From IMG/VR virus record IMGVR_UViG_3300030294_000005, positions 62,001-126,000 of that record: a stretch of DNA of 64,000 bases. One strand, given 5' to 3'. Both the position numbers and the translations under genes were made by a program. The notes under the pieces were generated by a model. That model did no database searches, was not told the DNA's origin, and was given only the letters and a program-made list of their open reading frames with translations. Shown one piece after another: positions 28,301 through 55,684 of the stretch. Positions within the stretch are counted from its first letter, which is position 1. Each line of letters opens with the position of its first letter.

Positions 28301-31300
28301 TGTCAATGGAACTCCAAATGCATTTTCAAAACTTTTATTTATATGACCTCCTATTTTATCAAACATTCCTTTGAATAATAATTTTATATCTTTCTTAATA
28401 GGATCAAATGCTTCTTTTAAAGGAGAAAATATCTTATTTTCTATAAAGTCTTGAATCTTAGTGGTAGTTACAGTCATAAATGATTTTAATGGATCTATAA
28501 GTACATGCCTTAATGAAGGTAATAATCCATTTTCATATTCTCCTGTCTTAGGATCTTTTGTACCAAATATAACTTTATTAAATTGATCAGTAGAACTGAG
28601 CATCCCACCTGCTGCTCCAATAGCTGCATTACCTAATAATCCAAATGGTCCAGTGAACACACCTATAGCTGCTCCTGCTGCCATTCTTGGTAAAAACTTT
28701 TTAATTTGTTCTTGATGTTTAGGTTTGATTAAACCTGTTTCACCAAATAAGAAATCCATTGCATGTTCATTATTTTTAGCAAATGCTATAGAAGAACCTA
28801 TTAATAATCCACCTACAGGTCCAAATGGAACAAATGGTAATAATCCTGTTAATCCACCAGCTATGCCAAATGATTGTAAATCTGGTGCTAACTTAGATAT
28901 TTGGTCTACAAATTTCTTTGGTATTACTCCACCATCTCGTTCTTTTGTTTCAGCATTAAAATCTCCAAATAACCAGTTCTGAATTTTCTCACTATTTTTA
29001 GTTAATGATATTCCAGCTCCTACAGCTGCACCTAATAAAGGTCCACCTATGGCCCCTGTTATTAATGAAACACCTCCACCTAGAAGTCCAGCTCCCATTG
29101 CTTCTGGTGCATATTTAGATATATTCTTTGTTACATCACTTATAGCTTCACCAAATTTCTTTTTCTCTCTATTTGGATTAACTCCAAATAAAGCATCTTT
29201 AACTTTGGTTGTTCCTTTATACAATTCATCTACAACCTGTTTTGCAAAAGGTTCTGATTCATTATACATTGCTCGTTGAATTGGATCTGTTGGTATTCCT
29301 TTTTTATCAAATTGACTTATCTTAGTAGTATACTCTTCTAATGCTTTATTCAAATTGATATTAAATACATTGAATACTTTATCATATAATTTATTGGCTT
29401 TTAATTCTTGTAACTTATTAAGTAGTTCGGGGTTTTCTACAGCAGTAGACATAAAGTTAGTAAATTCATCTTTACTACCGAGTTTAGAAGATTCTACAAA
29501 CCCTTGTACTTTTTTATCAGCTTGGATACCTATAGATCTAGATGATCTACCTAAAGCTGTACCTGATTCTATATCAGTTAATATACCTAATAAACTTTTA
29601 ACTTTATCAGATGTCAAAACTACTTCACCTTTACCTAATGTAGCAACCTGAGCATTTTCAATAACTCCACCTTGTTCATGATGAGGCATATTTTTATACA
29701 TCCAGTTTGATATTACACTAGTAAGACCTTGTGCAAATCCTAATGTTGCTTTTCCTTCTGGATTAGTAGTTAATGATGGATCTAATATATCTGCTTTTAT
29801 AGAACCTCTTTTAGTAGTTTCGCTAGTACTCATTGCTGATTTTAATAAACCAAATATACCAGATACGTTCTCTTTTATTGAAGATAAATAATCTGATACT
29901 TTTGTATTAAATCCTCCACCTTGTTGATCATCCATAGTGTTAAATGCAGATGCAGTTCCTTCAAAGTCTTTTGCTGATTTTTTAATTGCATCTTGAGGAG
30001 AATATTTATTAGCTATTATATCATTTACTGAAAGTTTTGATAATGAATCTTCATTAAATAATATATTATATTTACCTAACTTACTATATAGCTTAGAATA
30101 TGAACCATCTTTCTGTGACAAATCTTTTGTAAGATTCATCAATGTATTGAATTTTAAAGAGTCTAATTCCATTGGTTTATTAGCAAAACTATTAAATATA
30201 TTTTCCAATAATCCTTGTTCAGAATCGTCTAAGTTTGCTAAGTTCTTTAAGCCTTTACCATATTCATGCTTACTATATTCGAATACTCCTTCATTTACAT
30301 TTTGTTGCTTATCTACTAATTTCGATATAGTATCTGCAACTTTATTTTCTGTTTTTGGAATAGTTCCATCTTTAGCTTTAACATCTAATTCATCTAAAGA
30401 ATTTTCCATATTAACTTTAGTCTTTGATTTCTTTGATCTAAATTTATCAACTAATGGGCCATATACTGTCTTAAGTGAATTCTTTGATACTTGAAAAGCA
30501 TTAGCAAAAACATCTTTAGTTGCTTTCATTATTGCTGAGAATAATCCAGTATCTTTAGCAAATAAATAATCATGCATATTTTTCTTAATCTCATCTGGAT
30601 CAAGTCCAAACATACCAAATACTTTTTTGCTTAAGTCTCCCATACTCTTTATATCTAGTTTTTGCTTTATTGGATTTAGTATCTTTTCATTTATAAATAG
30701 ATTAAGTTGACCAAATTGACTAGCCAATTCTAATTTCATTATTCCAAATATACCATTAACATCTTGACCTTTATATTTAGTACTTCCAAATACTAAATCA
30801 TACATTCTTTGATCTACTTTGTTTATAGTATTCATTACAAATTTCATAGGCTTTGCTGTTATTTCGTTTAGTTTATCAATAACAGTTTTAGTTTTATCTG
30901 TTATACTGTCAGCTTCTAATAATTTATCTATTAAACCCTTCTTCTCACTTGCTTGATCTTTAAATCCTTTTTTAATATTTTCTAATTCTATCTTAGAATG
31001 AAGTTTCTTTGATAATTTAGTTTCATCATCTATATCAGAAACATTTATAACAGTTTTATCTTTTGATAATTGTCTTTCTTGGTCTCTTTTAAATCTTTCT
31101 TGATCTCTTTCAGCTTTTTGCCTTTTATCCGTTTCTGGTTTAATTCTTCTATTATCAGCTAAAGTTATACCATTAGAAGATGTTGGCATCGTATATTCAC
31201 TATCACCATATAATATTTTAGATTTGGAACTTGAAGATGAACCAAGACCATTTTGTCTTATAGCAGTTAATTCTTTGTACATATTTTGTAAGTAATAAAA

Positions 31301-36536: not shown

Positions 36537-39500
36537 ATGATATTTTTAGACGAATTGGATAATCTAAAATTATATAAAAAACAATTGTTTTTACCAATAA
36601 ACGAAAAAAATAAAAGAAAAGGTTCTGCCGTTTTTTTATTAACTCCAAATTATGAATCATCTAAAAAATTAATGAATAATGATAGTTTAGTTACCAGATG
36701 GTTTGAAAGTTATTATATAGAGAAGGATATATCATATTTTATAAATCAAGAAGGATATATTGTTCTTAATGATAATATTCCATATAATGTATTAAATGAA
36801 GAATTAAGAAATAGAATTGTTGTTACTAATACAAATAATATTATAAATGAAGCAGCAACAGATACTAAATTGGTTAAAGTTAAAGATCATCCATTATATG
36901 ATTATCTAAACTTTGATGAATATGATCCAGATGATATAATAGAGATTCCAATTTCTGATATAAAAGGAACTAATTTAGCTGAAGCTGATATACCTAATAC
37001 TTTAAAAGATCCAAAGAGTCTTCAAAGAGCATTGAAAATAAGGATGAGAAAACCTATAAATAGATTAAAGAGAATAGATCCTACTGACCCATCTAATACT
37101 GCAGCCCAAGTAGAAAAGATACAAGCATTAATGAATGAAAGTGCTTTAACTACAGAAGAGAAGAAAAAATTAAAAGATTCAGATTATGGATTATTAAAAA
37201 AGAAAAAATATCCTATGCCAGATAAGGAGCATGTACTATCAGCTATAAGATTTTTTAATTATGTAGATTCTGAGGATGAAAAAGAATTAGCTGATAATAT
37301 AAATAAAAAAATAAAAGAATATAAGATTGAAGATCAAGTTAATGTAGGAAAGAATAATAGATTTTCTAAATATTGCAATGAAGAATCTATAAAAGAATAT
37401 TTTAATTCTGAATCAACTCCTATTATATATGATTTACATTGTGCATTTTTAAAGTTCTTAGATGGACATTCTACAGAAGATGAAATGCTTTCAGATGTAG
37501 ATGTGAGATTTAAAGATAATAGTGAATTAATGAATGATGGATTAATAAATGACATTGATATATTTAATGACATTTCTGATTGTATATCATTTTATCTACC
37601 AAGATTAATTGATAAATGCAAATGCGATATAACTAAAATATTGAATAAATATTTATTCAATGATGATCTACAAGAATCATATATGGTAGGACATGTAGTC
37701 AAAGACTATTCAATTGACAAAATGGGACTAATGACAAAAGATTCTTTAATTATGTTTAATGAGAATATGGATGAAACAATAATGAATGAAGCAAATAAAG
37801 ATTACAATCCTGTTCTTTATAAGTTATTATATAATGAAAGATATAGAACTCCTAAAGAAGTAATAGCAATATATGATAATGTAAAGATAGATGCTCCTTA
37901 TATAACTAAAACATATTTAGATTATACTAAATATAGTAAACTCAATCTATTTGTAGATCTATCTTTCTATAACCAAACCTTCTTTAAAAATAATATATAT
38001 AAATTAGATAAGGGTATAGATTTATATTTTGAGTTTATAACAAGATTCTTAAAAGATTCTAGATTGGGAGCTGCGGGATATAATAAGAAAACTGTATTCA
38101 TTCCTGTTGATGACTGGACTAAACCTGATATGAAAAAAGTATATAACTATACTGAAGATATAAATCCGTTATCAATGATTTGTAGACTTATGGGGACTAC
38201 CAAATTATTAAATATACAACAAGAGTGGAAAGATATTGTATTAGTATTATTCTCTGCTCAAGGATATTTTAAAATAGATATCAATAGTTTAGTTGATAAA
38301 GATATAAGTCAAATACAAGTATTATTAAATAAACTAAAAAATAAAGATGTATCAATAGCAACTGATAATATAGATTCTCCTAAGGCTATAGTAGCTACTA
38401 TTGTAGATAAGATTGAAATTAGTCAAAATATAGAAATTAATAATTTGACTGGTAAAGCAGCAAAAGGAACTATATCTAATGGTGAGTTAGATGATAAGTT
38501 AAGTAATTCTGTTACATCTAAAACTGTTATTGATATTAATAAAAATGCACCTTCTGAAGATGTAGCACAGAATGATGATTTAAAAAATGAATTAGTTACT
38601 AAATTAAAAGATGCTTCTAAAGATGCTGCTTCAACTAATAATGTATTAGATGACATAAATAATGATGATGATATTAAAAAAATAATAGATACATTGTCAA
38701 CACAAGAAGATAATTCAGTAAAAATTAATGCAGCAAGATCAGCTAGAGTAACTAAATTGAACAATGATTTTTTAGACAGTAAGTTAAAAGAAACTACAGT
38801 AAAACAAATGATTGAACATGCTACCAATAATGAGCCTATCCCAAAAACTGAATTAAAAATAGATAGTGTGAATGAAGAGTGGAAAGACTTACGTTATATG
38901 AATTTTGAAAAAATATATAATCCAGCTGATGATATAGTAACTATGATAAATAGTTTTTCAGATAAAACAGCTCCAGTTATGGTACGAAATTTAAATATAG
39001 AAGACTCTTCTACTACAGAAGATTATAAAGATACCTGGACTGCTGAAATGGAAGATGTAAATGGAACTAGGTTTACATTAAAATTCGATATACCTAAATT
39101 TAAAGAAAATAAATTTATGTTATTAGGTGGTAATGAAAAAACAATAAATGGACAACTTGTATTATTACCTATAATAAAAACTGATGAAGATACTGTTCAG
39201 ATAGTTTCAAATTATAATAAAATATTTATAAGAAGATTTGGAACATCTAAAGGAAAATCTAATATAGTTGCTAATAGATTAATAAAAGCATTATCTAAAG
39301 AAAATCCCTTTAAAGTAGTTCCTGGAGATAATACAAAGATATGTTCTAAATATGAATTACCAATAGACTATATAGATTTAGCCTCACAATATTCTAAAAT
39401 AGAAACTAAGAAGCATATATTTTATTTTAATCAAGATGAAATAAGGGAGAAATATAAAGATACTATAGATCTTAAAAAAGGAATTCCAATATGTGTTGAA

Positions 39501-41780
39501 AAAGTTTCTAATAATATTATATATTTTAATGGTGATAATAATCAACAATTAGCAAATCTAATAAGATCTCAATTAATAATAGATGATTCATCATTTGAAG
39601 AAATATTTGAAAATACATCAATTGCTTCAAGATATACCTACTCAAAGGCTAGTATACTGAACACTGAGATTCCTCTAATACTCGTTATGGCATATAGTGA
39701 AGGTTTGCCTAAAGTGTTAAAGAAAGCCCATATAAATTACGAAATAATAGAAAAGAGACCAGCTTATGATAAGAATACCCAAGATATTATAAAATTTAAA
39801 GATGCATATATTTTATATACTTTAGATTATAATTCATCTTTATTGATGAATGGATTTAAAGAATGTGGAACTGAATTATATTCAATTTCAGAGATAACTA
39901 ATAAAACTATGTATTTAGATTTTCTTGATTTATTTGGCGGTAGATTAAGAGCAGATGGTCTTGATAACTTTCATGATTTAATGATAGATGTACCTATCAC
40001 AAAAGAAATATTAGAGTATTATAAACTACCAACTGATTATATAGAAGTTTTAGCTTATGCTAATTCACTGCTAGGAGATAATAAATATATAAGACATACT
40101 GATCAACGTGGTAGAAGGTATAGATCTAATGAAATAGTTGCTGGATATGCTTATCAAGCATTGGCTGATTCATATGGAGAATATAAAAGAAAGTTGAATC
40201 AATCAAGAAAAGCTACAATGGTTATAAAACAAAATGAAGTAATAAATAGAATCTTATTAGATCCAACAGCTTCTGATTTATCTACATTAAATCCAATACT
40301 AGAGCAAGAAGCTATGAATACTGTTAGTACAAAAGGACTAGTAGGAATGAACTCTGATAGAGGTTATAGTTTAGATAAAAGAACATTTGATAAATCAATG
40401 ATAAATGTATTAGGATTATCTACAGGGTTTGCTGGTAATGTTGGTATCTCAAGACAAGCAACAATAGATATGAATATAGAAGGTAAACGTGGATATATAA
40501 AAGTAACTGATGATCCAGCTGATTTAAATGTAACTAAATCTTTAACTATAACTGAAGCATTAACTCCATTCGGTACTAATATGGATGATCCATTTAGATC
40601 TGCAATGACATTTATACAAACATCTAAACATGGAATGAGAATAGCAAAAGGAATGCCTTCATTAATAACTAATGGAGCAGATGAAGCTTTGCCATTTATG
40701 GTTACTGATAAATTTGCATTTAAAGCTAAAGAAGATGGAAAAGTTATAGAGAGGTCAGATGATTATATGATAGTGCAATATAAATCTGGTGCTAAAGATT
40801 TTGTTGATTTAAGAAATAATATTAAAAAGAATTCTGATGGAGGTTTCTATATAACTTTAAAGCTAGACTCTGATTATAAAAAAGATAAAACATTTAAAAA
40901 AGATAATATACTTGCATATGATAAATTATCATTTTCAGATATGGTAGGTCATACAGATGATATTGGTTATAATTTAGGAGTATTGGTAAAAATAGCAATA
41001 TTAAATACTGATGAAGGTTATGAAGATAGTGCAATAATTTCAGAATATTTATCTGAAGCAATGGCATCTGAAGTTGTTGTAATGAAAGATATATCATTAC
41101 CAAAAAATACTAATATTTATAATATTGTAAAGAAAGGCGAACCAATTCAAGAAGGAGATCCATTAATAATATTTCAGAACTCTTTTGATGAAGAAGATGC
41201 CAATTTACTATTAAAGAATCTAGCTGGAGATGAAGAAGATATATCTGATCTTGGAAGAATTAGAGTTAAGTCTAAAATAACTGGAAATGTAGAGAATGTC
41301 AAAATCTATAGAACAGTTGAAAAAGAAGAGTTATCTGATTCTCTTAAGAAAACAGTAAATCAAATAGAAAAACCAACAAAGCAATTAAAAGATGTAATGA
41401 AAAAATATGATATAGATGAGTATAATAAACTGGACCCAGATTATAAACTTGATTCAACTGGAAAACTTAAAAATACAGATGATGGAATCCTGATAGAGTT
41501 CTATTTAAAATATAAAGATAAAATGTCTGTAGGAGATAAGTTAATATATTATTCAGCATTAAAAGGTGTTATAAAAGATATATTCCCACTTGGTAAAGAA
41601 CCATCATCTGAGTTTAGAAAAGATGAAAAAATTCATACACTCCTTGCATGTTCCTCAGTTAATGGTAGAATGGTGGGAAGTATATTATTATCTGCCCCTA
41701 TAAATAAAATAGTAATAGAATTAGATAGAGCAGTTAAAACTGAATTAGAAATACCATTTAAATATTTAGATGAGGAATAA
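36537..41780 (+). CDS. Phage multisubunit RNA polymerase beta-like subunit (probably virion RNAP) with long N-terminal extension
   Basis: DDPFRSAM..IQ..H (cf. RpoB DDANRALM..NMQRQ), GYEDSAIISE (GYNFEDS), GDKLIYYSALKGVI (GDKMAGRHGNKGV), SVNGRM (PSRM); late promoter and xxE/[SA] sites in the leader. Confidence 0.85.
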   Translation: MIFLDELDNLKLYKKQLFLPINEKNKRKGSAVFLLTPNYESSKKLMNNDSLVTRWFESYYIEKDISYFINQEGYIVLNDNIPYNVLNEELRNRIVVTNTNNIINEAATDTKLVKVKDHPLYDYLNFDEYDPDDIIEIPISDIKGTNLAEADIPNTLKDPKSLQRALKIRMRKPINRLKRIDPTDPSNTAAQVEKIQALMNESALTTEEKKKLKDSDYGLLKKKKYPMPDKEHVLSAIRFFNYVDSEDEKELADNINKKIKEYKIEDQVNVGKNNRFSKYCNEESIKEYFNSESTPIIYDLHCAFLKFLDGHSTEDEMLSDVDVRFKDNSELMNDGLINDIDIFNDISDCISFYLPRLIDKCKCDITKILNKYLFNDDLQESYMVGHVVKDYSIDKMGLMTKDSLIMFNENMDETIMNEANKDYNPVLYKLLYNERYRTPKEVIAIYDNVKIDAPYITKTYLDYTKYSKLNLFVDLSFYNQTFFKNNIYKLDKGIDLYFEFITRFLKDSRLGAAGYNKKTVFIPVDDWTKPDMKKVYNYTEDINPLSMICRLMGTTKLLNIQQEWKDIVLVLFSAQGYFKIDINSLVDKDISQIQVLLNKLKNKDVSIATDNIDSPKAIVATIVDKIEISQNIEINNLTGKAAKGTISNGELDDKLSNSVTSKTVIDINKNAPSEDVAQNDDLKNELVTKLKDASKDAASTNNVLDDINNDDDIKKIIDTLSTQEDNSVKINAARSARVTKLNNDFLDSKLKETTVKQMIEHATNNEPIPKTELKIDSVNEEWKDLRYMNFEKIYNPADDIVTMINSFSDKTAPVMVRNLNIEDSSTTEDYKDTWTAEMEDVNGTRFTLKFDIPKFKENKFMLLGGNEKTINGQLVLLPIIKTDEDTVQIVSNYNKIFIRRFGTSKGKSNIVANRLIKALSKENPFKVVPGDNTKICSKYELPIDYIDLASQYSKIETKKHIFYFNQDEIREKYKDTIDLKKGIPICVEKVSNNIIYFNGDNNQQLANLIRSQLIIDDSSFEEIFENTSIASRYTYSKASILNTEIPLILVMAYSEGLPKVLKKAHINYEIIEKRPAYDKNTQDIIKFKDAYILYTLDYNSSLLMNGFKECGTELYSISEITNKTMYLDFLDLFGGRLRADGLDNFHDLMIDVPITKEILEYYKLPTDYIEVLAYANSLLGDNKYIRHTDQRGRRYRSNEIVAGYAYQALADSYGEYKRKLNQSRKATMVIKQNEVINRILLDPTASDLSTLNPILEQEAMNTVSTKGLVGMNSDRGYSLDKRTFDKSMINVLGLSTGFAGNVGISRQATIDMNIEGKRGYIKVTDDPADLNVTKSLTITEALTPFGTNMDDPFRSAMTFIQTSKHGMRIAKGMPSLITNGADEALPFMVTDKFAFKAKEDGKVIERSDDYMIVQYKSGAKDFVDLRNNIKKNSDGGFYITLKLDSDYKKDKTFKKDNILAYDKLSFSDMVGHTDDIGYNLGVLVKIAILNTDEGYEDSAIISEYLSEAMASEVVVMKDISLPKNTNIYNIVKKGEPIQEGDPLIIFQNSFDEEDANLLLKNLAGDEEDISDLGRIRVKSKITGNVENVKIYRTVEKEELSDSLKKTVNQIEKPTKQLKDVMKKYDIDEYNKLDPDYKLDSTGKLKNTDDGILIEFYLKYKDKMSVGDKLIYYSALKGVIKDIFPLGKEPSSEFRKDEKIHTLLACSSVNGRMVGSILLSAPINKIVIELDRAVKTELEIPFKYLDEE

Positions 41781-44759: not shown

Positions 44760-45986
44760 TTACTTATCTTTATTTTCTATTACTTCATCTACAGGTTCTC
44801 CTATAACTTCATCTATATTATATTCTTCTTTCTCATAAGTACGTTTATATTCAGGAGTTAATGTGTCATACATAGACTTACCTAAAACTAAATTTATAAT
44901 AGGTTCTACTGTTTCTTGTATTTCCATAGCTAATATTCTTATTTCAGCTTGAGCATGAATATCTGTTCTCAATGCTAGGAATGCTATTAATGATTTAAAT
45001 GTAAATGTCATATATAATGACGTTTGGGCATTGTTTGGTAAGTATGCTCTAGCATCTTCTGGTATTAATCTATTTTCACCTAATGATTTATCATTTAATT
45101 GATTATAGATTTTCATAAGTTCATCGCCTAATTCTTGTAATGTTAACTCACTTGTTGAACCATTAAATCCTATATTATATTTATAATTTACATCATATTT
45201 ATCTTTATATTTATCAGGGGAATTGAATCCAAACTTTTCCGCACAATAATCTACATATCTTTGTGATAGTTGGGTTATTCCATTTCTATGTCTATCTACT
45301 TGTTGAGATATAATTCTTGATATATCTTTAAATAATATAGTGATAGAGCAGAAGTCTAATAAATCTTCTAATGAAAATATCTTATTAGTTTCATTATAGA
45401 TATACATGATATCATCCATGTTTACAATAGAGACGTTGGCACTTAATACTTTATTATTAAAAACAGCTGGATAAGTACAATCTAAATCTATAAATTTAGA
45501 TTCTGACATTATTTCATCTTCTATAAAATCATTTAAATATTCCTTATTAATATTATAGAGATTATTTAATATGATTTTTGCAATAGAATTATCTTGATTA
45601 TCTATATTTCTAAAGATATGTTTATATCCTCTTATAGAACCTCCAATAAGAAAATGTATTTCTTTTCCTATATATTTTATTTTTATATTTAAATATTTAC
45701 ATAGAGTTTCTATTTCTGCTAACTCTATTAGATTTTCTATGTCTAATTGTAATATAAGATATATTACTATATTAGAATGCTCTAGAATTGATTCATGCCC
45801 AGTTGCTACTCTTCTTTTTATATAATCTAATTTAGCTTGTATTCCTACCTCTCCATCTTTGTCATAGCATATTTTACATGCATCATGTATGATATCAATA
45901 TGATTATTAGAATATATGAATTTATCATATACTCCTTTGGTAAATAGTTTATGTTTTTTAATTAGTGATGATAATAATTTCTTCAT
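44760..45986 (-). CDS. thyX: FAD-dependent thymidylate synthase (extended, tandem-type)
   Basis: GHESILEH, ISR.ISQQ.DRHR....QLSQRYV, EDARAYLPN and LR...HAQAEIR.LA; late-type promoter at 46016-46027. Confidence 0.9.
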   Translation of the reverse strand: MKKLLSSLIKKHKLFTKGVYDKFIYSNNHIDIIHDACKICYDKDGEVGIQAKLDYIKRRVATGHESILEHSNIVIYLILQLDIENLIELAEIETLCKYLNIKIKYIGKEIHFLIGGSIRGYKHIFRNIDNQDNSIAKIILNNLYNINKEYLNDFIEDEIMSESKFIDLDCTYPAVFNNKVLSANVSIVNMDDIMYIYNETNKIFSLEDLLDFCSITILFKDISRIISQQVDRHRNGITQLSQRYVDYCAEKFGFNSPDKYKDKYDVNYKYNIGFNGSTSELTLQELGDELMKIYNQLNDKSLGENRLIPEDARAYLPNNAQTSLYMTFTFKSLIAFLALRTDIHAQAEIRILAMEIQETVEPIINLVLGKSMYDTLTPEYKRTYEKEEYNIDEVIGEPVDEVIENKDK

Positions 45987-46921: not shown

Positions 46922-47036
46922 AAAATATATAATGATTCCTTTCAGAATCATTATATATATGATAAAATTTTAGGAGAGCTTTAAAAAAATGAAATATTAA
47001 TTACTATGGATAATTAAAAAGATTTACTATATAGTT
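46922..47036 (-). ncRNA. Candidate small RNA containing anti-SD CUCUCCU
   Basis: AACT-N6-TA at 47025-47036, no ORF, ends at hairpin 46925-46959 plus TTTTT. Confidence 0.3.
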
Positions 47037-47745
47037 AATTAAAATAATTATTTAATATGGTTAATATATTAGAAAATATAGTATCTTTATCAAATATATT
47101 TGATACTATAGTACCAGCCATATCATGGGATTCATAACATTTAACTATGTTCCATGATAATTTATTACATACATACTCATGATTAGCATCTAACTCTAAT
47201 TGATATTTTTTATTAGATTCATGTAAATCATTAATTATACCATCCTTAGAATCTCTATTATATAAATTTTTAAAATTCAATTCTACTGGGATATACATAA
47301 ATAATACAATATCTTCTTTATGAAGTTGATTCTTTCCATATTCTAAATCTATACACCAATCTATAAACTTATCTTTTTCTTCACTGATATTATATCTTGT
47401 AGATTGATACATTATATTAGATCCTACATAACGATCCATTATAATAGTATATCCATCTTTTAATAATTTATCAATATTTATCTTATCATTATATCTATTC
47501 AGAGCATAGAATAATGATATAGTATGTGGATCAATATCATATAATTTACCATAATCTCCTTTTAAATATTTTTTTACAAATATTGAAGAATTATTGTTAT
47601 AAGTTGGATATGATATTAATATAGTTTTACTATTCCAATGATTTCTAATATATTCAGTTAGTAGTTTAGCATTGGTTTCTTTAAAGCATCCATCTAATCC
47701 TTCAAGAGTTATCATTTTTCCTTTAATATTTTCTCTAGTTATCAT
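47035..47745 (-). CDS. tmk: Thymidylate (dTMP) kinase
   Basis: ITLEGLDGCFKET P-loop, LFYALNR, IIMDRYVGSN.MYQ and D.HES. Confidence 0.85.
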   Translation of the reverse strand: MITRENIKGKMITLEGLDGCFKETNAKLLTEYIRNHWNSKTILISYPTYNNNSSIFVKKYLKGDYGKLYDIDPHTISLFYALNRYNDKINIDKLLKDGYTIIMDRYVGSNIMYQSTRYNISEEKDKFIDWCIDLEYGKNQLHKEDIVLFMYIPVELNFKNLYNRDSKDGIINDLHESNKKYQLELDANHEYVCNKLSWNIVKCYESHDMAGTIVSNIFDKDTIFSNILTILNNYFN

Positions 47746-47788
47746 TTTATAAACTCCTCTACATTAATATATTAATATATATTTTAAG

Positions 47789-47798
47789 TATATATTAT
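47789..47798 (+). promoter_or_regulatory. Putative early promoter TATATATTAT
   Basis: Located at the strand switch, upstream of the plus-strand early block. Confidence 0.55.
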
Positions 47799-47837
47799 AT
47801 GTATGTAAGAATAATAATAAATTTATAAAATGAAAGG

Positions 47838-48263
47838 ATGATTAAAATGCTACAACTAAGTGATAGGGATACAAAAATTTCAAAAAGACTTCTTAATGGA
47901 GAAAACAAAAATGAATTAGCAAAGGAGTATCATATATCAATATCTACAATTAATCATATATATAGAATGTATAATTATAGAGTAGAAATATGCAGTGGAG
48001 TTATTGGAAAAGATAAGAATCAAACCTCTATACTTATATATATATTAAAATATGATAAAGCATCTTTTAAAACTTTAGATAGAGAAAGATATTCTACTAT
48101 AGAACTTGTAGTAAAATTATTTAATACGGATAAGATTGAGAAGATTATTAATATAAGAAACATGGGTGTAAAAACTATGAAATATATTGCCGATTGTTTG
48201 AAAGAGGATAATTACACTATAAGTAAAGTAGTACAGGATTATATAGACGAAAGGATGATTTAA
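47838..48263 (+). CDS. Sigma-region-4-like HTH fused to RNAP alpha-CTD-like domain, copy 1
   Basis: LSDRD..I....LNG....ELAKEY.IS.STI (HTH) plus TL.RERYSTIE.....IINIRNMGVKTM..I.DCL (alpha-CTD HhH; cf. RNLGRKS). Confidence 0.6.
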   Translation: MIKMLQLSDRDTKISKRLLNGENKNELAKEYHISISTINHIYRMYNYRVEICSGVIGKDKNQTSILIYILKYDKASFKTLDRERYSTIELVVKLFNTDKIEKIINIRNMGVKTMKYIADCLKEDNYTISKVVQDYIDERMI

Positions 48264-48267
48264 TATG
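48218..48267 (+). repeat. 50-bp direct repeat copy 1 (gene end + RBS + ATG)
   Basis: Identical to 48630-48679. Confidence 0.9.
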
Positions 48268-48675
48268 TTATATTTAAGTGATAGAGATATTGAGATATCA
48301 AAAAGGATTATAGATGGAGAATCTATAAGTAAATTAACAAAAGAATATAATATACCAAAAAGCACTATTAGAAGATTATATAATATGTATAATTATAGAG
48401 TATATATATATGATAAAGCTATTAAAAAAGAAGATATGCCATTGATTATATATACTTTAAAATTTGACATGAGATGTTTTAGTGTATTAAATAGAAATAA
48501 ATATTATACTATAGATTCTGTAGTAGAATTATTTAATACAGATAGGATTGAGGAGATTACTAATATGAGAAATATGGGTATAAGAAATATAAAATTCATA
48601 GTTGATTGCTTAAAAAATAATAATTATGGTATAAGTAAAGTAGTACAGGATTATATAGACGAAAGGATGATTTAA
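48265..48675 (+). CDS. Sigma-region-4-like HTH fused to alpha-CTD-like domain, copy 2
   Basis: Tandem paralog of 47838..48263; RCFSVLNRNKYYTID...ITNMRNMGIRN. Confidence 0.6.
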   Translation: MLYLSDRDIEISKRIIDGESISKLTKEYNIPKSTIRRLYNMYNYRVYIYDKAIKKEDMPLIIYTLKFDMRCFSVLNRNKYYTIDSVVELFNTDRIEEITNMRNMGIRNIKFIVDCLKNNNYGISKVVQDYIDERMI

Positions 48676-48679
48676 TATG
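48630..48679 (+). repeat. 50-bp direct repeat copy 2
   Basis: Identical to 48218-48267. Confidence 0.9.
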
Positions 48680-49021
48680 AAAATATTAAGAACTGATAGA
48701 CAAATGGGTAAGACTGGACTATTAATTAAAAAATCTCATGATGAATGGAGATATATAATATGTAAAGATAGACAAAGAGTAGAAGTTATACAATCTATGG
48801 CAGTTGAAATGAAATTATATATACCATTTCCAATAATGGTAGATGAATTACCTCTTCTTAGTCATAATATAAAAGAGGTATTAGTAGATGACATAGAAGA
48901 TGTTTTAGAATATATGATAGGTAAGAAGATAGAATTAGCTACTACATCATGTAAGATAATAACTAAGGAGGATTGTATTAATGAGATTAAGAACAAAAAA
49001 GAGTTACCTGGAGATATCTAA
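48677..49021 (+). CDS. Small P-loop NTPase-like protein
   Basis: RQMGKT (Walker A-like) and VLVDD (Walker B-like) within only 114 aa. Confidence 0.5.
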   Translation: MKILRTDRQMGKTGLLIKKSHDEWRYIICKDRQRVEVIQSMAVEMKLYIPFPIMVDELPLLSHNIKEVLVDDIEDVLEYMIGKKIELATTSCKIITKEDCINEIKNKKELPGDI

Positions 49022-49529
49022 ATATATAATAGATCAATTCTGGTATCTAAAGAATGATAAGTCATTACATATAGAAATTAATAATATAAAAAGTATTTCA
49101 CTTGCTAGATTTACTATTAAAGGTGAACAGAAGAAAATAACCATACGACAGAATATAATAAAATTAGTTAGTGTTTATCCAGAAATATATAATAATATTA
49201 TCAATACTGCGAATGTTTATTTAAATTATATTATAGGTGAAAATAGCTTAGATAATAATGATGCATTGTTTGTATTTATATTATTACATGAGTTAGGACA
49301 TCTAGCATTTAGATTTGTTTATAATAATAAATTTGGAATAGATTTAAATAAATTAAAACGTATGTTATTAATTGATAGACTCACATTTGCTACAACTACA
49401 AATGATGATAAAAATATAAGTATATATAAAGATCATTTTAGTTCTGATGAAATATATGCAAATATGTTTGCATATAAAAACTTTCCAAGAATTTGGTACA
49501 TATTAAAGAATAAAAAATACGTTAAATAA
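48981..49529 (+). CDS. Zincin-like HExxH metallopeptidase
   Basis: FILLHELGH followed by E..AN.FA (ImmA/IrrE-like pattern). Confidence 0.65.
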   Translation: MRLRTKKSYLEISKYIIDQFWYLKNDKSLHIEINNIKSISLARFTIKGEQKKITIRQNIIKLVSVYPEIYNNIINTANVYLNYIIGENSLDNNDALFVFILLHELGHLAFRFVYNNKFGIDLNKLKRMLLIDRLTFATTTNDDKNISIYKDHFSSDEIYANMFAYKNFPRIWYILKNKKYVK

Positions 49530-49915: not shown

Positions 49916-50671
49916 ATGAGATTTGAGTTAGAACGACAATTGATAGATTATACACATATGGTATTTGATTATTTTAATGGAAAAGTTAATAATATTCCAG
50001 CAAAAATAAATATAAGAAATAATAAAGATAAGAATATATTAGGAAATAATATGTTCAATATAGTCAATCTATATCTGTGGAATATAATAGATAATTACTG
50101 GGATGAGGATAGTATTAAAGAGCATATTATATATAATATTGTTCATGAATTATCTCATATAGGACAAGATATAGATTATTATATATACAGTATAGATAAT
50201 GATTACAATAAATTAAAAGAAAATGAAAATAATTATAACACGTACAAATATTTAAATGACAATATAAACTCTATATCCTTAGATTTAGGAATAGTTTTTA
50301 ATAATACTAATATACATAATAACTATATATATTTTAGTAAATATAGTAATTATAAAAGATTCGCATTAGAAGAGTATTACAAACACTGTATAAAAACTAT
50401 GTTATACAATGATACTAATAAAGATATATCACAAGAGGTAGATTTAGCATTTAAAATTGATAGTTTATCATTTGTAATAAATCATGTAGAATTTCCAATA
50501 AAAAAATATAATGTTATAAATCAAGATGTAAATGGATTTAATAATATAATAGAAGCATACAACAATACTAATACATCAATATCCTCTACTATTATAACAC
50601 AAAACTATGCAACTATTTGCATAAATTCAATTGTATACTTACATTATAATTTTAATATAGTGCAAGTATGA
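49916..50671 (+). CDS. HExxH metallopeptidase-like protein
   Basis: IVHELSH..Q with a downstream E; terminator at 50681-50715. Confidence 0.55.
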   Translation: MRFELERQLIDYTHMVFDYFNGKVNNIPAKINIRNNKDKNILGNNMFNIVNLYLWNIIDNYWDEDSIKEHIIYNIVHELSHIGQDIDYYIYSIDNDYNKLKENENNYNTYKYLNDNINSISLDLGIVFNNTNIHNNYIYFSKYSNYKRFALEEYYKHCIKTMLYNDTNKDISQEVDLAFKIDSLSFVINHVEFPIKKYNVINQDVNGFNNIIEAYNNTNTSISSTIITQNYATICINSIVYLHYNFNIVQV

Positions 50672-50773
50672 TAGCTATAGTATAAAGTAGTACCAAAATT
50701 TGGTATTACTTTATATTTTTTTTTAAATAAATCCCTACATATAGGTAAAAACTAAAAGGGAGACGATTTTAAT

Positions 50774-51447: not shown

Positions 51448-52224
51448 ATGCGTGATCCATTAGGACTAATGGAAGCTGAAACAAAAGATCAACCATTTTC
51501 TGTAATAAAATTAGATAGTATACCAGATTTTGATATTGAAGATTATGATTTAATGGATTCAAAAGAATTTCAAAAATTTTTATATTCAATAGAAAATATT
51601 GCTAGAGTATCGTTTGAATATAGAGCTATAATAGCATATCTAAGAGAAAATATGGATATGAATAAATGTAGTGTTTTCGAAAATATAAATAATATAGATA
51701 CTACAAAAGTTAAAATAGAAATTCATCATCATCCATTTTCATTATATGATATAACTATTATTGTATATAATAAGAGGTTATATAATAGAGAATCTATAGA
51801 TGAAGAATTAGTTGCAAAAGAAGTTATGTATTTACATTATGCACTACTAATTGGATTAATACCATTATCAGAAACTGTTCATGAATTAGTTCATAATCAA
51901 TATCTATTTATACCAAATAGTAATGTTATGGGAAAATATGAAGAATTCTATAATATGTATAAAGATTTTATGACTCCAGAGAATATAGATATATATGAAA
52001 GAACTGTTGCTTTTAGTAATTCATATGATGAATCTAAACAAAATCATATATTAGATAAAAGCTATATTTATGTAGATTTAACTGGTTCTTATGACATTCC
52101 TACTTATCAAAGTGTAATAGATTCAATGAGTCATAAAATAAAAGAATTAAAATCTAGTAATAATGTAGATATGACGTTTGAATTACCAAAAAAGAAGAGA
52201 GTTATAAGTTTCTTAGATAAATAA
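51448..52224 (+). CDS. HNH-fold protein (late)
   Basis: KC...IEIHHHP...LIPLSETVHELVH; AACA-N6-TA at 51419-51430. Confidence 0.55.
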   Translation: MRDPLGLMEAETKDQPFSVIKLDSIPDFDIEDYDLMDSKEFQKFLYSIENIARVSFEYRAIIAYLRENMDMNKCSVFENINNIDTTKVKIEIHHHPFSLYDITIIVYNKRLYNRESIDEELVAKEVMYLHYALLIGLIPLSETVHELVHNQYLFIPNSNVMGKYEEFYNMYKDFMTPENIDIYERTVAFSNSYDESKQNHILDKSYIYVDLTGSYDIPTYQSVIDSMSHKIKELKSSNNVDMTFELPKKKRVISFLDK

Positions 52225-53483: not shown

Positions 53484-53770
53484 AATTAAAAAAAGCTATA
53501 AAAATTATTAGTGAGATTAGAGATTTAAAAGATAATTGGAATGGATATGGAGCCAAACCTATATCTAAAGGTGTAATTAATAGAGCATTACAGTTAGTAG
53601 TATTAATGAAACCTCTTCCAGATATGATATGTCCTACCGCTAACAATTCTATTCAATTTGAATGGGAAAATAAATTATTATATCTTGAAATAGAAATATT
53701 TAGTGATAAGATAGAATTGTTTAATACATGTACAAAAAATGAATCACTGTGTATAGGAGGAGATTTATAA
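53480..53770 (+). CDS. Hypothetical protein
   Basis: L.DNWNGYGA.PI and IQFEW motifs; overlaps both neighbours. Confidence 0.65.
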   Translation: MKLKKAIKIISEIRDLKDNWNGYGAKPISKGVINRALQLVVLMKPLPDMICPTANNSIQFEWENKLLYLEIEIFSDKIELFNTCTKNESLCIGGDL

Positions 53771-54327
53771 TGCATATTTTTTTCGATACTGAATTTACAG
53801 GACTTCATCAAAATACTACACTAATAAGCATAGGATTGATATCAGAAGATGGTAAAAGTTTCTATGCTGAATTTAGTGATTATGATAGAAGTCAATGTGA
53901 TGAATGGATAAATGAAAATATTTTAGCAAATTTATCTAAGAATGTTAATGAACTCTCATCTATAGCTGATATAAATGTAGATGGGGATAAAGAAGAGATT
54001 AAGAATGAATTATTAAAATGGATGTCTCAATTTGATATAATTGAATGGGTTGCAGATGTTTGTCATTATGATTTTATGTTATTAATAAATTTATTATATG
54101 GAGAAGCACTTAATATGCCAAGCGATAGATTCTGTGCAGCATGTCATGATATAAATCAAGATATTGCTTCATATTATAAAATATCAGAAATTGAGGCTTT
54201 TAATATGTCAAGAGAAGCTATTGTAATAGATTTTAATGATAATATTGGAGGTACTAAACATAATGCATTATATGATGCATTTGTAGCCAAATCTATATAT
54301 GATGGTATAGTTGCTAGAATAGGATAA
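53770..54327 (+). CDS. DEDDh 3'-5' exonuclease
   Basis: FFDTEFTGL, LISIGL, YDF and HNALYDA. Confidence 0.85.
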   Translation: MHIFFDTEFTGLHQNTTLISIGLISEDGKSFYAEFSDYDRSQCDEWINENILANLSKNVNELSSIADINVDGDKEEIKNELLKWMSQFDIIEWVADVCHYDFMLLINLLYGEALNMPSDRFCAACHDINQDIASYYKISEIEAFNMSREAIVIDFNDNIGGTKHNALYDAFVAKSIYDGIVARIG

Positions 54328-54749: not shown

Positions 54750-55007
54750 ATGATAAATAATAAATTACCCAATCCTAATTATAAAGAACGTATTAGGAGA
54801 ATTGCAGGAGCTAATGTAAAAACCTCAGAGAATATGGACAAATGGCCTGATGATGTAGTTTATACCATATATTCTAATGAGGTTTTAGAAACGTTACCAG
54901 TTATTATTTTGGAACAAATGAGAAATCATATACAAAGTGTTATAGATAAAGCTATAATTATGAAGGTGGAAGATACAAATATAGAGAAGAAGGATAGATT
55001 AAAATGA
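54750..55007 (+). CDS. Hypothetical early protein
   Basis: AAGGAG RBS; early motif at 54708-54717. Confidence 0.6.
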   Translation: MINNKLPNPNYKERIRRIAGANVKTSENMDKWPDDVVYTIYSNEVLETLPVIILEQMRNHIQSVIDKAIIMKVEDTNIEKKDRLK

Positions 55008-55684
55008 ATAAATTGACAATAGATAATATCTTAAAAAATAGTATATGTATCTTTGTAGATGCATCTATATTAAATACTGAAAAAAGTTTTATAGGATGCC
55101 CAGGGTGCTTAATAGTTAATGGTGAGCAAATATCTTATAGTGATTATATAAGATTAGATTCAACAAATAGTAGATCAGAATTAGCTGCTGTGCAATTAGG
55201 AGTGACTCAAGCATTAAATTATATTAATTCAGGAGTGCCAATTAATTTATTTTCAGATTCTAAAGTATGCATATATTCAATTAGAGAATGGATTTTTAAT
55301 TGGTGTAATAATATTGTAGATGGTGTTCTATATGGATCATCATATAAACCAATAAGTAATCAGGATATGATAATAAATATAATAAATACTATACGATTTA
55401 ATAATCTACATATAAATTTATATCATCAAAAAGGGCATGTAGATATTTTCAATAAACATTCATTAGAACATGCTAGAGAGGTCTTTATAGAATCTAATAA
55501 GGTTGATATAGAATATGATCTATTAAAATATATATCAGATTATAATAATAATGTAGATATACAAACAAAAATGAAATTAGAACATTGTAATGGACAAAAT
55601 AGAAAGTTAGTTAATCCAATAAGATTTTCGCTAGATGGATTCGATAAATACAAATATAGAGAATTGGTAAGGAGGGATTTATAA
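55004..55684 (+). CDS. rnhA: Ribonuclease HI
   Basis: IFVDAS, TNSRSEL.A, FSDS..C, NQD, HQKGH and N..VD RNase H motifs. Confidence 0.8.
   Translation: MNKLTIDNILKNSICIFVDASILNTEKSFIGCPGCLIVNGEQISYSDYIRLDSTNSRSELAAVQLGVTQALNYINSGVPINLFSDSKVCIYSIREWIFNWCNNIVDGVLYGSSYKPISNQDMIINIINTIRFNNLHINLYHQKGHVDIFNKHSLEHAREVFIESNKVDIEYDLLKYISDYNNNVDIQTKMKLEHCNGQNRKLVNPIRFSLDGFDKYKYRELVRRDL

What the first reader, a model, noticed from the sequence alone, without database searches (positions are those of the whole stretch)
47838..48675. Tandem early genes fusing a sigma4-like HTH to an RNAP alpha-CTD-like domain
Seen: each protein of about 140 aa has an N-terminal HTH (LSDRD..I...L.G....LAKEY.IS.STI) and a C-terminal segment matching the alpha-CTD pattern (R....L.R...TI..........RNMG.K...I..CL; bacterial RpoA has R..NCLKR..I.T....L.KVRNLG.KS..E). 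They are the first genes after an early promoter. Known: sigma4 binds -35 elements, and alpha-CTD binds UP elements and activators. Inference: a phage with its own RNAP could use these as mimics that occupy host -35/UP regions or titrate activators or NusA, giving host transcription shut-off.
Basis: partly seen in the sequence, partly recalled or inferred. Interest (0 to 1): 0.72.

Follow-up and report, generated by a model that had tools for sequence, protein, structure and literature searches.

The report
Early phage HTH plus alpha-CTD proteins
Two tandem early genes of an AR9-like giant phage from peat each encode a small protein that joins a helix-turn-helix DNA-binding domain to a domain folded like the C-terminal domain of the bacterial RNA polymerase alpha subunit; this is probably an early DNA-binding regulator, an architecture already present but unstudied in databases and in phage AR9.

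Summary
Genes at 47847-48263 (138 aa) and 48265-48675 (136 aa) are 57% identical tandem paralogs. Each has an N-terminal three-helix HTH and a C-terminal domain that matches bacterial alpha-CTD. The sequence matches are all sub-threshold but consistent across Pfam, NCBIfam and a PDB profile search. An AlphaFold2 model (pLDDT 91) gives Z about 7 and TM 0.6-0.77 to solved alpha-CTDs.

"Sigma4-like" is true only as a fold, shared with LuxR/GerE. No member matches Sigma70_r4.

The record is a 236-kb, 26% GC jumbo phage with its own multisubunit RNA polymerases. It carries about 42 copies of the AR9 virion-polymerase early promoter, and one lies 42 nt before gene 1.

AR9 gene g120 has the analogous layout (weak Sigma70_r4 plus alpha-CTD matches). 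It is a validated earliest-class gene of unknown function. Small alpha-CTD proteins of uncultured phages and bacteria are already annotated but unstudied.

My best reading is an early, fast-evolving, two-domain DNA-binding regulator. The HTH would read the major groove and the alpha-CTD-type helix-hairpin-helix the AT-rich minor groove. The target is more likely host than phage promoters.

The parts
47786..47805 (+). AR9-type early (virion-RNAP) promoter motif AAGTATATATTAT-ATGTAT-G. The predicted transcription start is G47805.
   Evidence: PWM score is 25.2 bits, rank 33 of about 41 credible sites, all 17-290 nt (most 40-115) upstream of co-oriented genes. The motif equals the AR9 consensus AAATATATATTAT-(6N)-G+1 (PMC5312081). 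The G at base 3 is unique in this genome, but it also occurs in the validated AR9 early promoters g108 and g120. No late-type AACA-6N-T[AG] motif lies in this spacer. No RNA data are available.
47833..47838 (+). Shine-Dalgarno AAAGGA of gene 1. It is part of the repeated junction GAAAGGATGATT that begins at 47832, 48249 and 48661.
   Evidence: Read directly from the sequence. AAGGAG-type k-mers are the most enriched upstream words genome-wide.
47847..48263 (+). Gene 1, 138 aa (the ORF is open from ATG 47838, 141 aa): HTH plus alpha-CTD-like protein.
   Evidence: The AF2 model has pLDDT 91 and pTM 0.80.
47862..48005 (+). Gene 1 N-terminal three-helix HTH (model helices 9-19, 24-31, 35-56).
   Evidence: VIA Z 8.1 to DesR (LuxR type), 7-7.8 to many sigma region 4 domains, 6.0 to Mu C. 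Pfam GerE is 19 bits against a 23.5 cut-off.
48012..48227 (+). Gene 1 alpha-CTD-like (HhH)2 domain (model residues 59-130).
   Evidence: VIA Z 7.0 to 1z3e_B (66 of 67 residues), 6.9 to E. coli alpha 251-316, 6.8 to H. pylori alpha-CTD. The best other helix-hairpin-helix hit is PolX at Z 6.0. Foldseek TM by target is 0.6-0.77 with rmsd about 2 A to isolated alpha-CTD chains. Pfam RNA_pol_A_CTD E 0.014.
48265..48675 (+). Gene 2, 136 aa, a paralog of gene 1. The HTH spans roughly residues 9-43 (48289-48393) and the alpha-CTD-like domain residues 56-117 (48430-48615).
   Evidence: It retains the Arg that aligns with the conserved Arg of the alpha-CTD R-S-x-N-C-L motif, and the N-M-G-x-R/K hairpin. 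dN/dS against gene 1 is 0.54.
48677..49021 (+). Third gene of the predicted early operon, 114 aa, function unknown.
   Evidence: phrog_1828, E 2.3e-19.
48981..49529 (+). Small HExxH (zincin-like) protein, 182 aa. It is a conserved neighbour of the HTH/alpha-CTD genes.
   Evidence: It is a homolog of P0018, which lies directly upstream of P0012/P0016 in L011 (E 9e-9). The Atlas structure search gives Peptidase_U49, M48 and SprT-like folds at TM 0.43-0.67.
49916..50671 (+). Second HExxH protein, 251 aa, last gene of the predicted operon.
   Evidence: The HELSH motif is read. Similarity to the 182-aa protein around the motif is weak (E 0.039).
50679..50727 (+). Terminator-like hairpin plus T-run that ends the predicted six-gene early operon.
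   Evidence: 18-pair stem followed by TTTTTTTAAA. Six sites were found against 1.0 expected.

Best explanation
The two genes encode small, basic (pI about 9), two-domain DNA-binding proteins. They are made in the first minutes of infection from a virion-RNA-polymerase (AR9-type) early promoter.

The N-terminal three-helix HTH reads a specific sequence in the major groove. The rigidly attached C-terminal domain is a diverged homolog of the RNA polymerase alpha-CTD. Like alpha-CTD on UP elements, it would contact the adjacent AT-rich minor groove through its helix-hairpin-helix loops.

The protein therefore occupies promoter-type DNA and acts as an accessory transcription regulator, most simply by occlusion. 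I lean towards host promoters as the target (early host re-programming or silencing) rather than the phage's own promoters.

Shown:
- The genes, their paralogy and their folds.
- The promoter motif.
- The phage's own RNA polymerases.

Inferred:
- DNA binding by both domains.
- The target and the effect on transcription.
For: Fold and homology:
- AF2 model with pLDDT 91 and pTM 0.80, implying a fixed two-domain arrangement.
- The N-domain matches DNA-bound HTHs of the LuxR/sigma4/KorA/Mu C type.
- The C-domain ranks alpha-CTD first by sequence profile and by structure.

DNA-contact positions:
- The hairpin N-[ML]-G-x-[KR]-[TNS] is kept in genes 1 and 2.
- The Arg aligned with the conserved Arg of the alpha-CTD R-S-x-N-C-L motif is kept in gene 2, P0007 and P0012. 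That these are the DNA-binding '265 determinant' residues is textbook knowledge, not tested here.
- Net charge is positive in both domains of genes 1 and 2.
- A similar shape occurs in the N-terminus of DUF3701 integrases, a DNA-binding context.

Early timing:
- The promoter motif.
- No late motif upstream of gene 1.
- P0007 in another phage also sits right behind such a motif.
- AR9 g120, with weak Sigma70_r4 plus RNA_pol_A_CTD matches, has a mapped early start site. Its mRNA is highest at 5 min.

Accessory, fast-evolving character:
- Only 5 members in 3 phage contigs among 1.8 to 5.8 billion proteins.
- None in 50,697 phage records by tblastn.
- No match in Staphylococcus phages S6 and SA1.
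- Tandem duplication in two lineages.
- dN/dS of 0.54.
- By contrast, the early promoter itself is almost identical to AR9's.
Against: - No binding site was found. Palindromes in the upstream spacer are at chance level.
- Gene 1 has Ala where the key DNA-contacting Arg of alpha-CTD aligns.
- Conserved columns across the family are mostly hydrophobic core, so no conserved DNA-contact surface can be shown.
- All sequence matches to alpha-CTD are below curated thresholds.
- The host is unknown, so host targets cannot be examined.
- No RNA run was listed, so the promoter and timing rest on motif analogy.
- Alpha-CTD is also a protein-interaction hub, so the domain could bind a protein instead of DNA.
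Confidence: 0.5

Rival explanations
1. Protein decoy. The free alpha-CTD-like domain mimics host alpha-CTD. It titrates host factors that dock on alpha-CTD or sigma4 (activators, Spx-type regulators, NusA), or caps sigma4. This shuts off host transcription without needing DNA binding.
For: - The best sequence matches of the C-domain profile are alpha-CTDs of Bacillota: 8i23_A, 7l7b_A, 1z3e_B, 3ihq_B, 3gfk_B. This fits capture from a host of an AR9-like phage.
- The AR9 analogue is expressed in the earliest class.
- The phage does not need host RNAP if it behaves like AR9.
- The family evolves fast and is patchily distributed.
Against: - Identity to alpha-CTD is only about 18-26%, so partner surfaces are unlikely to be preserved. 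None could be checked.
- A decoy would not need a rigidly attached, basic HTH.
- No interaction test was possible because the host is unknown.
Confidence: 0.15
2. Accessory promoter-recognition or activator factor of the phage's own alpha-less, sigma-less RNA polymerase. The HTH/alpha-CTD protein binds phage promoter DNA and recruits or modulates the non-virion (or virion) enzyme, for example through the beta-flap.
For: - Jumbo-phage RNAPs lack alpha. Reviews state that no recognisable initiation-factor homologs are encoded (PMC7598289; PMC5312081).
- Iyer et al. note that the flap of these enzymes lacks a known partner (PMC7824862).
- Here and in AR9, exactly one alpha-CTD-like locus exists per genome.
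Against: - AR9 nvRNAP plus gp226 suffices for late-promoter initiation in vitro. Early transcription needs no new protein synthesis.
- The promoters are nearly identical between AR9 and this phage, yet the proteins are not detectably similar (hhalign probability 7.8%; no match).
- No match was found in the related Staphylococcus phages S6 and SA1.
- Tandem paralogs diverge at dN/dS 0.54.
Confidence: 0.12
3. A DNA-binding protein of a non-transcriptional process, such as recombination or arm-site binding, replication initiation, packaging, or nucleoid remodelling.
For: - Weak HTH matches to resolvase HTH_7, transposase-type HTHs and small-terminase PHROGs.
- Structural resemblance to the N-terminus of DUF3701 integrases and to the G20C small terminase HTH (Z 6.3).
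Against: - No recombinase, terminase or replication gene lies in the predicted operon.
- These HTH matches are generic and sub-threshold.
- The early-only promoter does not fit packaging.
Confidence: 0.1
4. The alpha-CTD likeness is only a generic helix-hairpin-helix arrangement with no evolutionary relation to RpoA.
For: - All HMM scores are below gathering thresholds: 15.6 and 14.8 bits against 23.8.
- Z about 7 is in the range the aligner's own notes call 'middling'.
- PolX (HhH)2 scores Z 6.0, not far below.
Against: - Of all Pfam families, RNA_pol_A_CTD is the one matched by most members (4 of 5). No other HhH family appears.
- Several independent rpoA models match at the right place.
- The ten best PDB profile hits are all alpha-CTD.
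- phmmer from gene 2 retrieves bona fide multi-alpha-CTD proteins: P0005 at 144 bits and P0011 at 88 bits for PF03118.
Confidence: 0.08

Closest known systems
C-terminal domain of bacterial RNA polymerase alpha subunit (RpoA alpha-CTD, Pfam PF03118)
   Same: - Same compact (HhH)2 fold, about 66 residues aligned, Z 6.8-7.0 and TM 0.6-0.77.
- Shared sequence pattern R-x-x-x-x-L-x-R...T-I and R-N-[LM]-G-x-K.
   Different: - It is not tethered to an alpha N-terminal assembly domain. Instead it is fused behind an HTH in a 136-138 aa protein.
- It scores below the Pfam cut-off.
- Gene 1 lacks the aligned Arg.
- There are extra helices before and after the core.
Bacillus phage AR9 g120 (RefSeq BI022_gp119, YP_009283024.1; 237 aa). 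RefSeq labels it 'RNA polymerase'; its authors label it 'hypothetical protein'.
   Same: - Same phage lineage.
- Same layout of an HTH (there weakly Sigma70_r4, E 0.011) followed by a weak RNA_pol_A_CTD match (E 0.017; 0.001 in the genome scan).
- It lies directly behind an AAG-variant early promoter and diverges from another gene block.
- It belongs to the earliest expression class.
   Different: - No demonstrable sequence homology (hhalign probability 7.8%; no match in the genome).
- It is a single copy.
- It carries an extra roughly 80-aa C-terminal part.
- Its model was too poor to compare (pLDDT 49).
- Its function is equally unknown.
Uncharacterised 'RNA polymerase alpha subunit C-terminal domain-containing' proteins of 120-170 aa in bacteria and uncultured phages, and Sigma70_r4 plus alpha-CTD fusions such as P0011
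   Same: - HTH followed by alpha-CTD in one small protein.
- Whole-length structural matches at TM 0.57 (AFDB A0A0E3GRK5, A0A7W0HL19), and named alpha-CTD proteins of 123-166 aa.
- BFVD entries of 128-139 aa from uncultured Caudovirales.
- Atlas clusters.
- P0011 passes both Pfam cut-offs.
   Different: - Those proteins pass Pfam thresholds and often carry a true sigma region 4.
- The window's family is far more diverged, its HTH is not sigma-like by sequence, and it occurs as tandem pairs in AT-rich jumbo phages.
- I found no experimental study of any of them.
Phage transcription factors that work at the -35/UP region: Mu Mor and C, T4 MotA
   Same: - Small, early or middle phage proteins with an HTH that binds promoter-proximal DNA.
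- Weak Mor and PHROG 'late transcriptional activator' matches.
- Mu C HTH at Z 6.0.
   Different: - Those factors contact host alpha-CTD or sigma4. They do not carry an alpha-CTD-like domain themselves.
- They serve phages that depend on host RNAP, whereas this phage has its own polymerases.

Membership tests
RNA_pol_A_CTD (PF03118) / RpoA alpha-CTD | HMM score at or above the curated gathering cut-off (23.8 bits) | tested here: not met
   Scores are 15.6 and 14.8 bits, E 0.014 and 0.024. Four of 5 family members match, all sub-threshold. The genome scan gives 16.2 and 15.5 bits.
RNA_pol_A_CTD (PF03118) / RpoA alpha-CTD | Compact four-helix (HhH)2 fold of alpha-CTD | tested here: met
   The model has pLDDT 91. 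Z is 7.0, 6.9 and 6.8 to B. subtilis, E. coli and H. pylori alpha-CTD, with 65-66 residues aligned. TM by target is 0.6-0.77 at about 2 A.
RNA_pol_A_CTD (PF03118) / RpoA alpha-CTD | DNA-contact residues (the Arg of R-S-x-N-C-L and the G-x-K-S hairpin; the E. coli '265 determinant', from textbook knowledge) | tested here: inconclusive
   The Arg is kept in gene 2, P0007 and P0012, but is Ala in gene 1. The hairpin is N-M-G-V-K-T in gene 1 and N-M-G-I-R-N in gene 2. Binding itself was not tested.
RNA_pol_A_CTD (PF03118) / RpoA alpha-CTD | Part of an RpoA subunit (linked to the alpha N-terminal dimerisation/assembly domain) | tested here: not met
   The proteins are 136-138 aa with an N-terminal HTH and no RNA_pol_L/RNA_pol_A_bac match.
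Sigma-70 region 4 (PF04545 / PF08281) | HMM match to region 4 | tested here: not met
   No match at E<=1 in either protein or any family member. The genome scan with PF04545 hits two other loci, not these genes.
Sigma-70 region 4 (PF04545 / PF08281) | Region-4 type HTH fold | tested here: inconclusive
   Z is 7.0-7.8 to many sigma4 domains, but 8.1 to the LuxR-type DesR and to an archaeal TF, and 7.2 to KorA/KorB. The fold class is shared and not specific. The first helix of sigma4 is absent.
LuxR/GerE HTH (PF00196) | HMM score at or above the cut-off (23.5 bits) | tested here: not met
   Gene 1 scores 19 bits. Gene 2 does not match.
AR9-type early (virion RNAP) transcription unit | Promoter AAATATATATTAT-(6N)-G upstream, co-oriented, in a phage with AR9-like virion RNAP | tested here: met
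   The motif is at 47786-47805 with 1 mismatch, of the same AAG variant as validated AR9 promoters. The vRNAP beta-like gene is 30-33% identical to those of AR9, PBS1, LPJP1 and S6.
AR9-type early (virion RNAP) transcription unit | Transcript 5' end at the predicted G and early accumulation | not testable with these tools
   No RNA run was listed for this DNA. Only DNA runs from peat metagenomes hold it.
AR9 g120 family | Detectable sequence homology to AR9 g120 | tested here: not met
   hhalign probability is 7.8% over 34 columns. P0020 finds nothing in this genome. g120 relatives are found only in AR9-like Bacillus phages.

The most novel reading that the evidence does not exclude
The fused HTH/alpha-CTD proteins, and AR9 g120 with them, are the missing trans-acting stand-ins for the sigma4 and alpha-CTD promoter contacts in alpha-less, sigma-less jumbo-phage transcription. 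Alternatively, they are a single-chain replica of the sigma4/alpha-CTD/DNA assembly that sits on host UP/-35 regions and blocks host RNA polymerase. Either would be a previously undescribed way for a phage with its own multisubunit polymerase to use captured host polymerase parts.
Probability: 0.12. Interest if true: 0.8.

Novelty: new variant of a known kind. Interest (0 to 1): 0.5.

Why it matters
Reviews of jumbo-phage transcription state that these phages lack alpha subunits and encode no recognisable homologs of cellular initiation factors (PMC7598289, PMC5312081). Here an AR9-like phage encodes early proteins built from an HTH and a recognisable, if diverged, alpha-CTD module. AR9 itself apparently does so too, in g120.

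If these proteins act on promoters, they offer a tractable entry point, because AR9 and Bacillus subtilis are laboratory systems. Two questions become testable:
- How such phages silence the host.
- How such phages tune their own alpha-less polymerases.

If they are ordinary accessory regulators, the finding is still a useful annotation for a family that is 'hypothetical' everywhere.

Tried and rejected
- Heterodimer of the two paralogs: complex prediction returned 'no answer' (score 0.00). This is no evidence either way.
- Structure of the AR9 g120 relative P0020: pLDDT 49, unusable.
- More relatives: the search for homologous proteins found only the protein itself or known members. Viral contigs gave one HTH-HNH protein of a different architecture. 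tblastn against 50,697 phage records found nothing. blastn of the region found nothing.
- Sigma-70-type promoter scan: matches are fewer than in shuffles, so uninformative in 26% GC DNA.
- A -35-like TTTGT element upstream of early promoters: rejected. These are the T-tails of upstream terminator hairpins, and the positions carry no information content.
- Operator candidates in the 92-nt spacer: the TTAATATATTAA palindrome and other short inverted repeats are at chance level.
- RNA evidence: no RNA run was listed.
- Population variation: all other contigs carrying the locus are 100% identical, so there is no polymorphism to analyse.
- PADLOC: only generic HTH-level matches.
- Literature: four searches for phage or free-standing alpha-CTD proteins returned nothing relevant. 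The AR9 genome paper is not held.
Full report
**What is there.** The window is bases 62001-126000 of a 236,184-bp virus record with 25.9% GC. At the stated coordinates lie two + strand ORFs, 47838-48263 and 48265-48675.
- They are 57% identical as proteins (E 1e-53) and 76% identical as DNA.
- No further copy exists in the genome.
- Gene 1 most likely starts at ATG 47847, giving 138 aa. The SD AAAGGA (47833-47838) lies 8 nt upstream of that ATG. The public gene call is 138 aa, and gene 2 starts with the same MLxLSDRD.
- The junction GAAAGGATGATT, which carries the SD of the next gene, recurs at 47832, 48249 and 48661. The last 45 nt of both genes are identical. This marks a tandem duplication.
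- dN/dS between the copies is 0.54: both are maintained but diverging.

**Domains by sequence.**
- The N-terminal 55 residues give only sub-threshold, generic HTH matches: GerE, CENP-B_N, HTH_7, HTH_23, HTH_psq, Mor, SpoIIID.
- No Sigma70_r4 match appears at E<=1. A genome-wide PF04545 scan hits two other loci instead.
- The C-terminal half matches RNA_pol_A_CTD in both proteins (E 0.014 and 0.024; 15.6 and 14.8 bits against a 23.8 cut-off).
- It also matches several NCBIfam rpoA models at the alpha C-terminus (E 3e-4 to 0.03).
- Four of five family members hit PF03118 independently. No other helix-hairpin-helix family appears.
- A profile of the C-terminal halves searched against PDB returns alpha-CTD chains as its ten best hits. 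The best are Bacillota enzymes (8i23_A E 0.0046; 7l7b_A; 1z3e_B).
- phmmer of gene 2 against 1.84 billion representatives retrieves only 14 proteins. Among them are P0005 (six alpha-CTD repeats, 144 bits) and P0011 (Sigma70_r4 plus two alpha-CTDs, both above Pfam cut-offs).

**Domains by structure.** An AlphaFold2 model of gene 1 from a 4-sequence alignment has pLDDT 91 and pTM 0.80.
- An exhaustive structural search places residues 1-60 on LuxR-type and sigma region 4 HTHs. Z is 8.1 for DesR, 7.0-7.8 for many sigma4 domains including sigmaE region 4 on -35 DNA, and 6.0 for Mu C.
- Residues 59-130 fall on alpha-CTDs. Z is 7.0 for B. subtilis 1z3e_B (66 of 67 residues), 6.9 for E. coli alpha 251-316 and 6.8 for H. 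pylori. The next helix-hairpin-helix protein, PolX, is at Z 6.0.
- Foldseek aligns isolated alpha-CTD chains at TM 0.6-0.77 and about 2 A.
- These Z values are moderate by the tool's own notes. The case rests on the agreement of sequence and structure, not on either alone.
- 'Sigma4-like' is therefore a fold-class statement only. 'Alpha-CTD-like' is well supported as diverged homology, which I put at about 0.85-0.9.

**The phage and the promoter.**
- The genome encodes a beta'-like protein with SADFDGD.
- It encodes a beta-like protein matching RNA_pol_Rpb2_6.
- It encodes a 1747-aa virion-type beta-like protein (window 36537-41780). Its best relatives, at 30-33% identity, are in Bacillus phages AR9, PBS1 and Goe21, Listeria phage LPJP1 and Staphylococcus jumbo phages.
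- K-mer enrichment in upstream regions revealed AATTATATATTAT-(6N)-G-AATAAAA in about 42 copies. In every intergenic copy it is co-oriented with the next gene, most of them 40-115 nt (range 17-290 nt) from its start.
- This is essentially the experimentally defined AR9 virion-RNAP early promoter AAATATATATTAT-(6N)-G+1 (PMC5312081).
- A late-type motif, T(T/A)AACA-(6N)-T(A/G), is present in 63 of 145 upstream regions against 13.8 +/- 3.7 in shuffles. It matches AR9's AACA-(6N)-TA/G.
- The spacer before gene 1 carries AAGTATATATTAT-ATGTAT-G (47786-47805; 25.2 bits, rank 33) and no late motif.
- Its G at the third base is unique in this genome. However, the validated AR9 early promoters of g108 and g120 have the same AAG (supplement of PMC5312081).
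- A terminator-like hairpin at 50679-50727 closes a predicted six-gene early operon.
- No RNA run could be listed. The DNA occurs in at least 12 peat-metagenome runs, all identical.

**Relatives and context.**
- The family is tiny: gene 1, gene 2, P0007 (223 aa, a 27.5-kb contig), and P0012 plus the adjacent P0016 (a 49.6-kb contig). The last two again form a tandem pair.
- Both contigs look like large AT-rich phages, carrying ligase, SMC, chaperonin and AAA genes.
- P0007 sits 33 nt behind an early-type motif that follows a terminator.
- In L011 the gene upstream of the pair (P0018) is a homolog of the window's 182-aa HExxH protein (E 9e-9). That protein has a small zincin-like predicted fold. 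So a zincin neighbour is conserved in two of three phages.

**The AR9 parallel.**
- A PF03118 scan of AR9, LPJP1, S6 and SA1 found one ORF in AR9 (E 0.001). This is BI022_gp119, 237 aa, labelled 'RNA polymerase' in RefSeq, directly behind an annotated early promoter.
- Pfam gives it Sigma70_r4 (E 0.011, residues 55-83) followed by RNA_pol_A_CTD (E 0.017, residues 91-152).
- It is g120 of Lavysh et al. 2017. It has a mapped early start site at 94722, FPKM of 313, 237 and 167 at successive times, and membership of a possible 'pre-early' group. The authors call it hypothetical.
- Sequence homology to the window's proteins is not demonstrable, and its model failed.
- The parallel is therefore one of lineage, architecture and expression class, not proven orthology.

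**How it most likely works.** Three features point to a protein that lies on DNA with both domains: a rigid HTH plus (HhH)2 module, basic in both halves, with the alpha-CTD hairpin motif kept. The HTH would sit in the major groove and the hairpins in an adjacent AT-rich minor groove, as alpha-CTD does on UP elements (established knowledge).
- The proteins evolve fast, are duplicated and are patchily distributed. The early promoter, by contrast, is almost invariant between AR9 and this phage.
- This argues against a core factor for phage promoters. It favours an accessory, probably host-directed, early function.
It does not support specific sigma4 mimicry, and it leaves the titration idea untested.
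- Rivals and their weights are given in the structured fields.

**Novelty.**
- HTH plus alpha-CTD proteins of 120-170 aa are already in AFDB, UniProt, BFVD and the ESM Atlas. They are listed as uncharacterised 'alpha subunit C-terminal domain-containing' proteins and include entries from uncultured phages.
- I found no study of any of them.
- The window adds a very diverged, tandemly duplicated variant in an AR9-like jumbo phage.
- It also draws attention to AR9 g120.
- I rate it a new variant of a known but unstudied kind, of moderate interest.

Noticed in passing
whole record; examples in window at 1465, 12691(-), 35721(-), 44745(-), 46803(-), 54331, 54705, 57868: About 42 copies of the AR9-type early promoter AATTATATATTAT-6N-G-AATAAAA occur genome-wide. 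A late-type motif T(T/A)AACA-6N-T(A/G) is present in 63 of 145 upstream regions against about 14 in shuffles. Together they allow a full early/late map of this uncultured peat phage.
   Followed up: partly
window 36537-41780 (+): A 1747-aa virion-type RNAP beta-like protein is encoded as one uninterrupted ORF with a late-type motif 50 nt upstream. The AR9 counterpart is joined from six pieces and interrupted by an HNH endonuclease gene.
   Followed up: partly
window 22337-33085 (-): A 3582-aa ORF carries a Peptidase_C39-like domain (residues 3040-3170) and a phage lysozyme domain (3279-3408) at its C-terminus. The first 3000 residues are unannotated. It may be a giant virion or injected protein.
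   Followed up: no
window 44760-45986 (-) and 47035-47745 (-): There is a ThyX-like protein with an unexplained N-terminal extension of about 200 aa, and a thymidylate-kinase-like protein. Both lie behind early promoters (46803, 44745). The phage's late promoters resemble AR9's uracil-dependent ones. Whether the DNA contains dU or dT, and what these enzymes make, is unresolved.
   Followed up: no
window 48981-49529 and 49916-50671 (+); L011 7397-7999: Two small HExxH (zincin-like) proteins share the early operon with the HTH/alpha-CTD pair. A homolog sits next to the related pair in another phage contig. The pairing of an HTH regulator with a metallopeptidase recalls ImmR/ImmA-type modules, but no M78 match was found.
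   Followed up: partly
G000:C1:48173-48241 (outside the window; 364-aa frame) and G000:C1:136994-137074: Two other ORFs give weak Sigma70_r4 matches (E 7e-5 and 0.014). The first lies behind the early promoter at genome position 48046.
   Followed up: no
AR9 NC_031039.1 around 85593 and 94722 (supplement of PMC5312081): The AR9 early promoters of g108 and g120 both carry the AAG variant of the core. They also share ACCGTATTAAAA about 15 nt upstream. This may be an extra element of a 'pre-early' subclass.
   Followed up: no
window 47832-47849, 48249-48267, 48661-48679: The junction GAAAGGATGATT(T)AA(A/T)ATG is repeated three times. It holds the end of one gene, its stop codon, and the SD and start of the next. 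The remnant before gene 1 (the 'MIK' codons of the 141-aa ORF) suggests a lost upstream copy or duplication of the junction itself.
   Followed up: partly
window 53749-54327 and 55004-55684 (+): Two RNase H-like genes (phrog_2259 and phrog_531) lie in the same + strand block. The window also holds phrog_12252 at 51448-52224.
   Followed up: no
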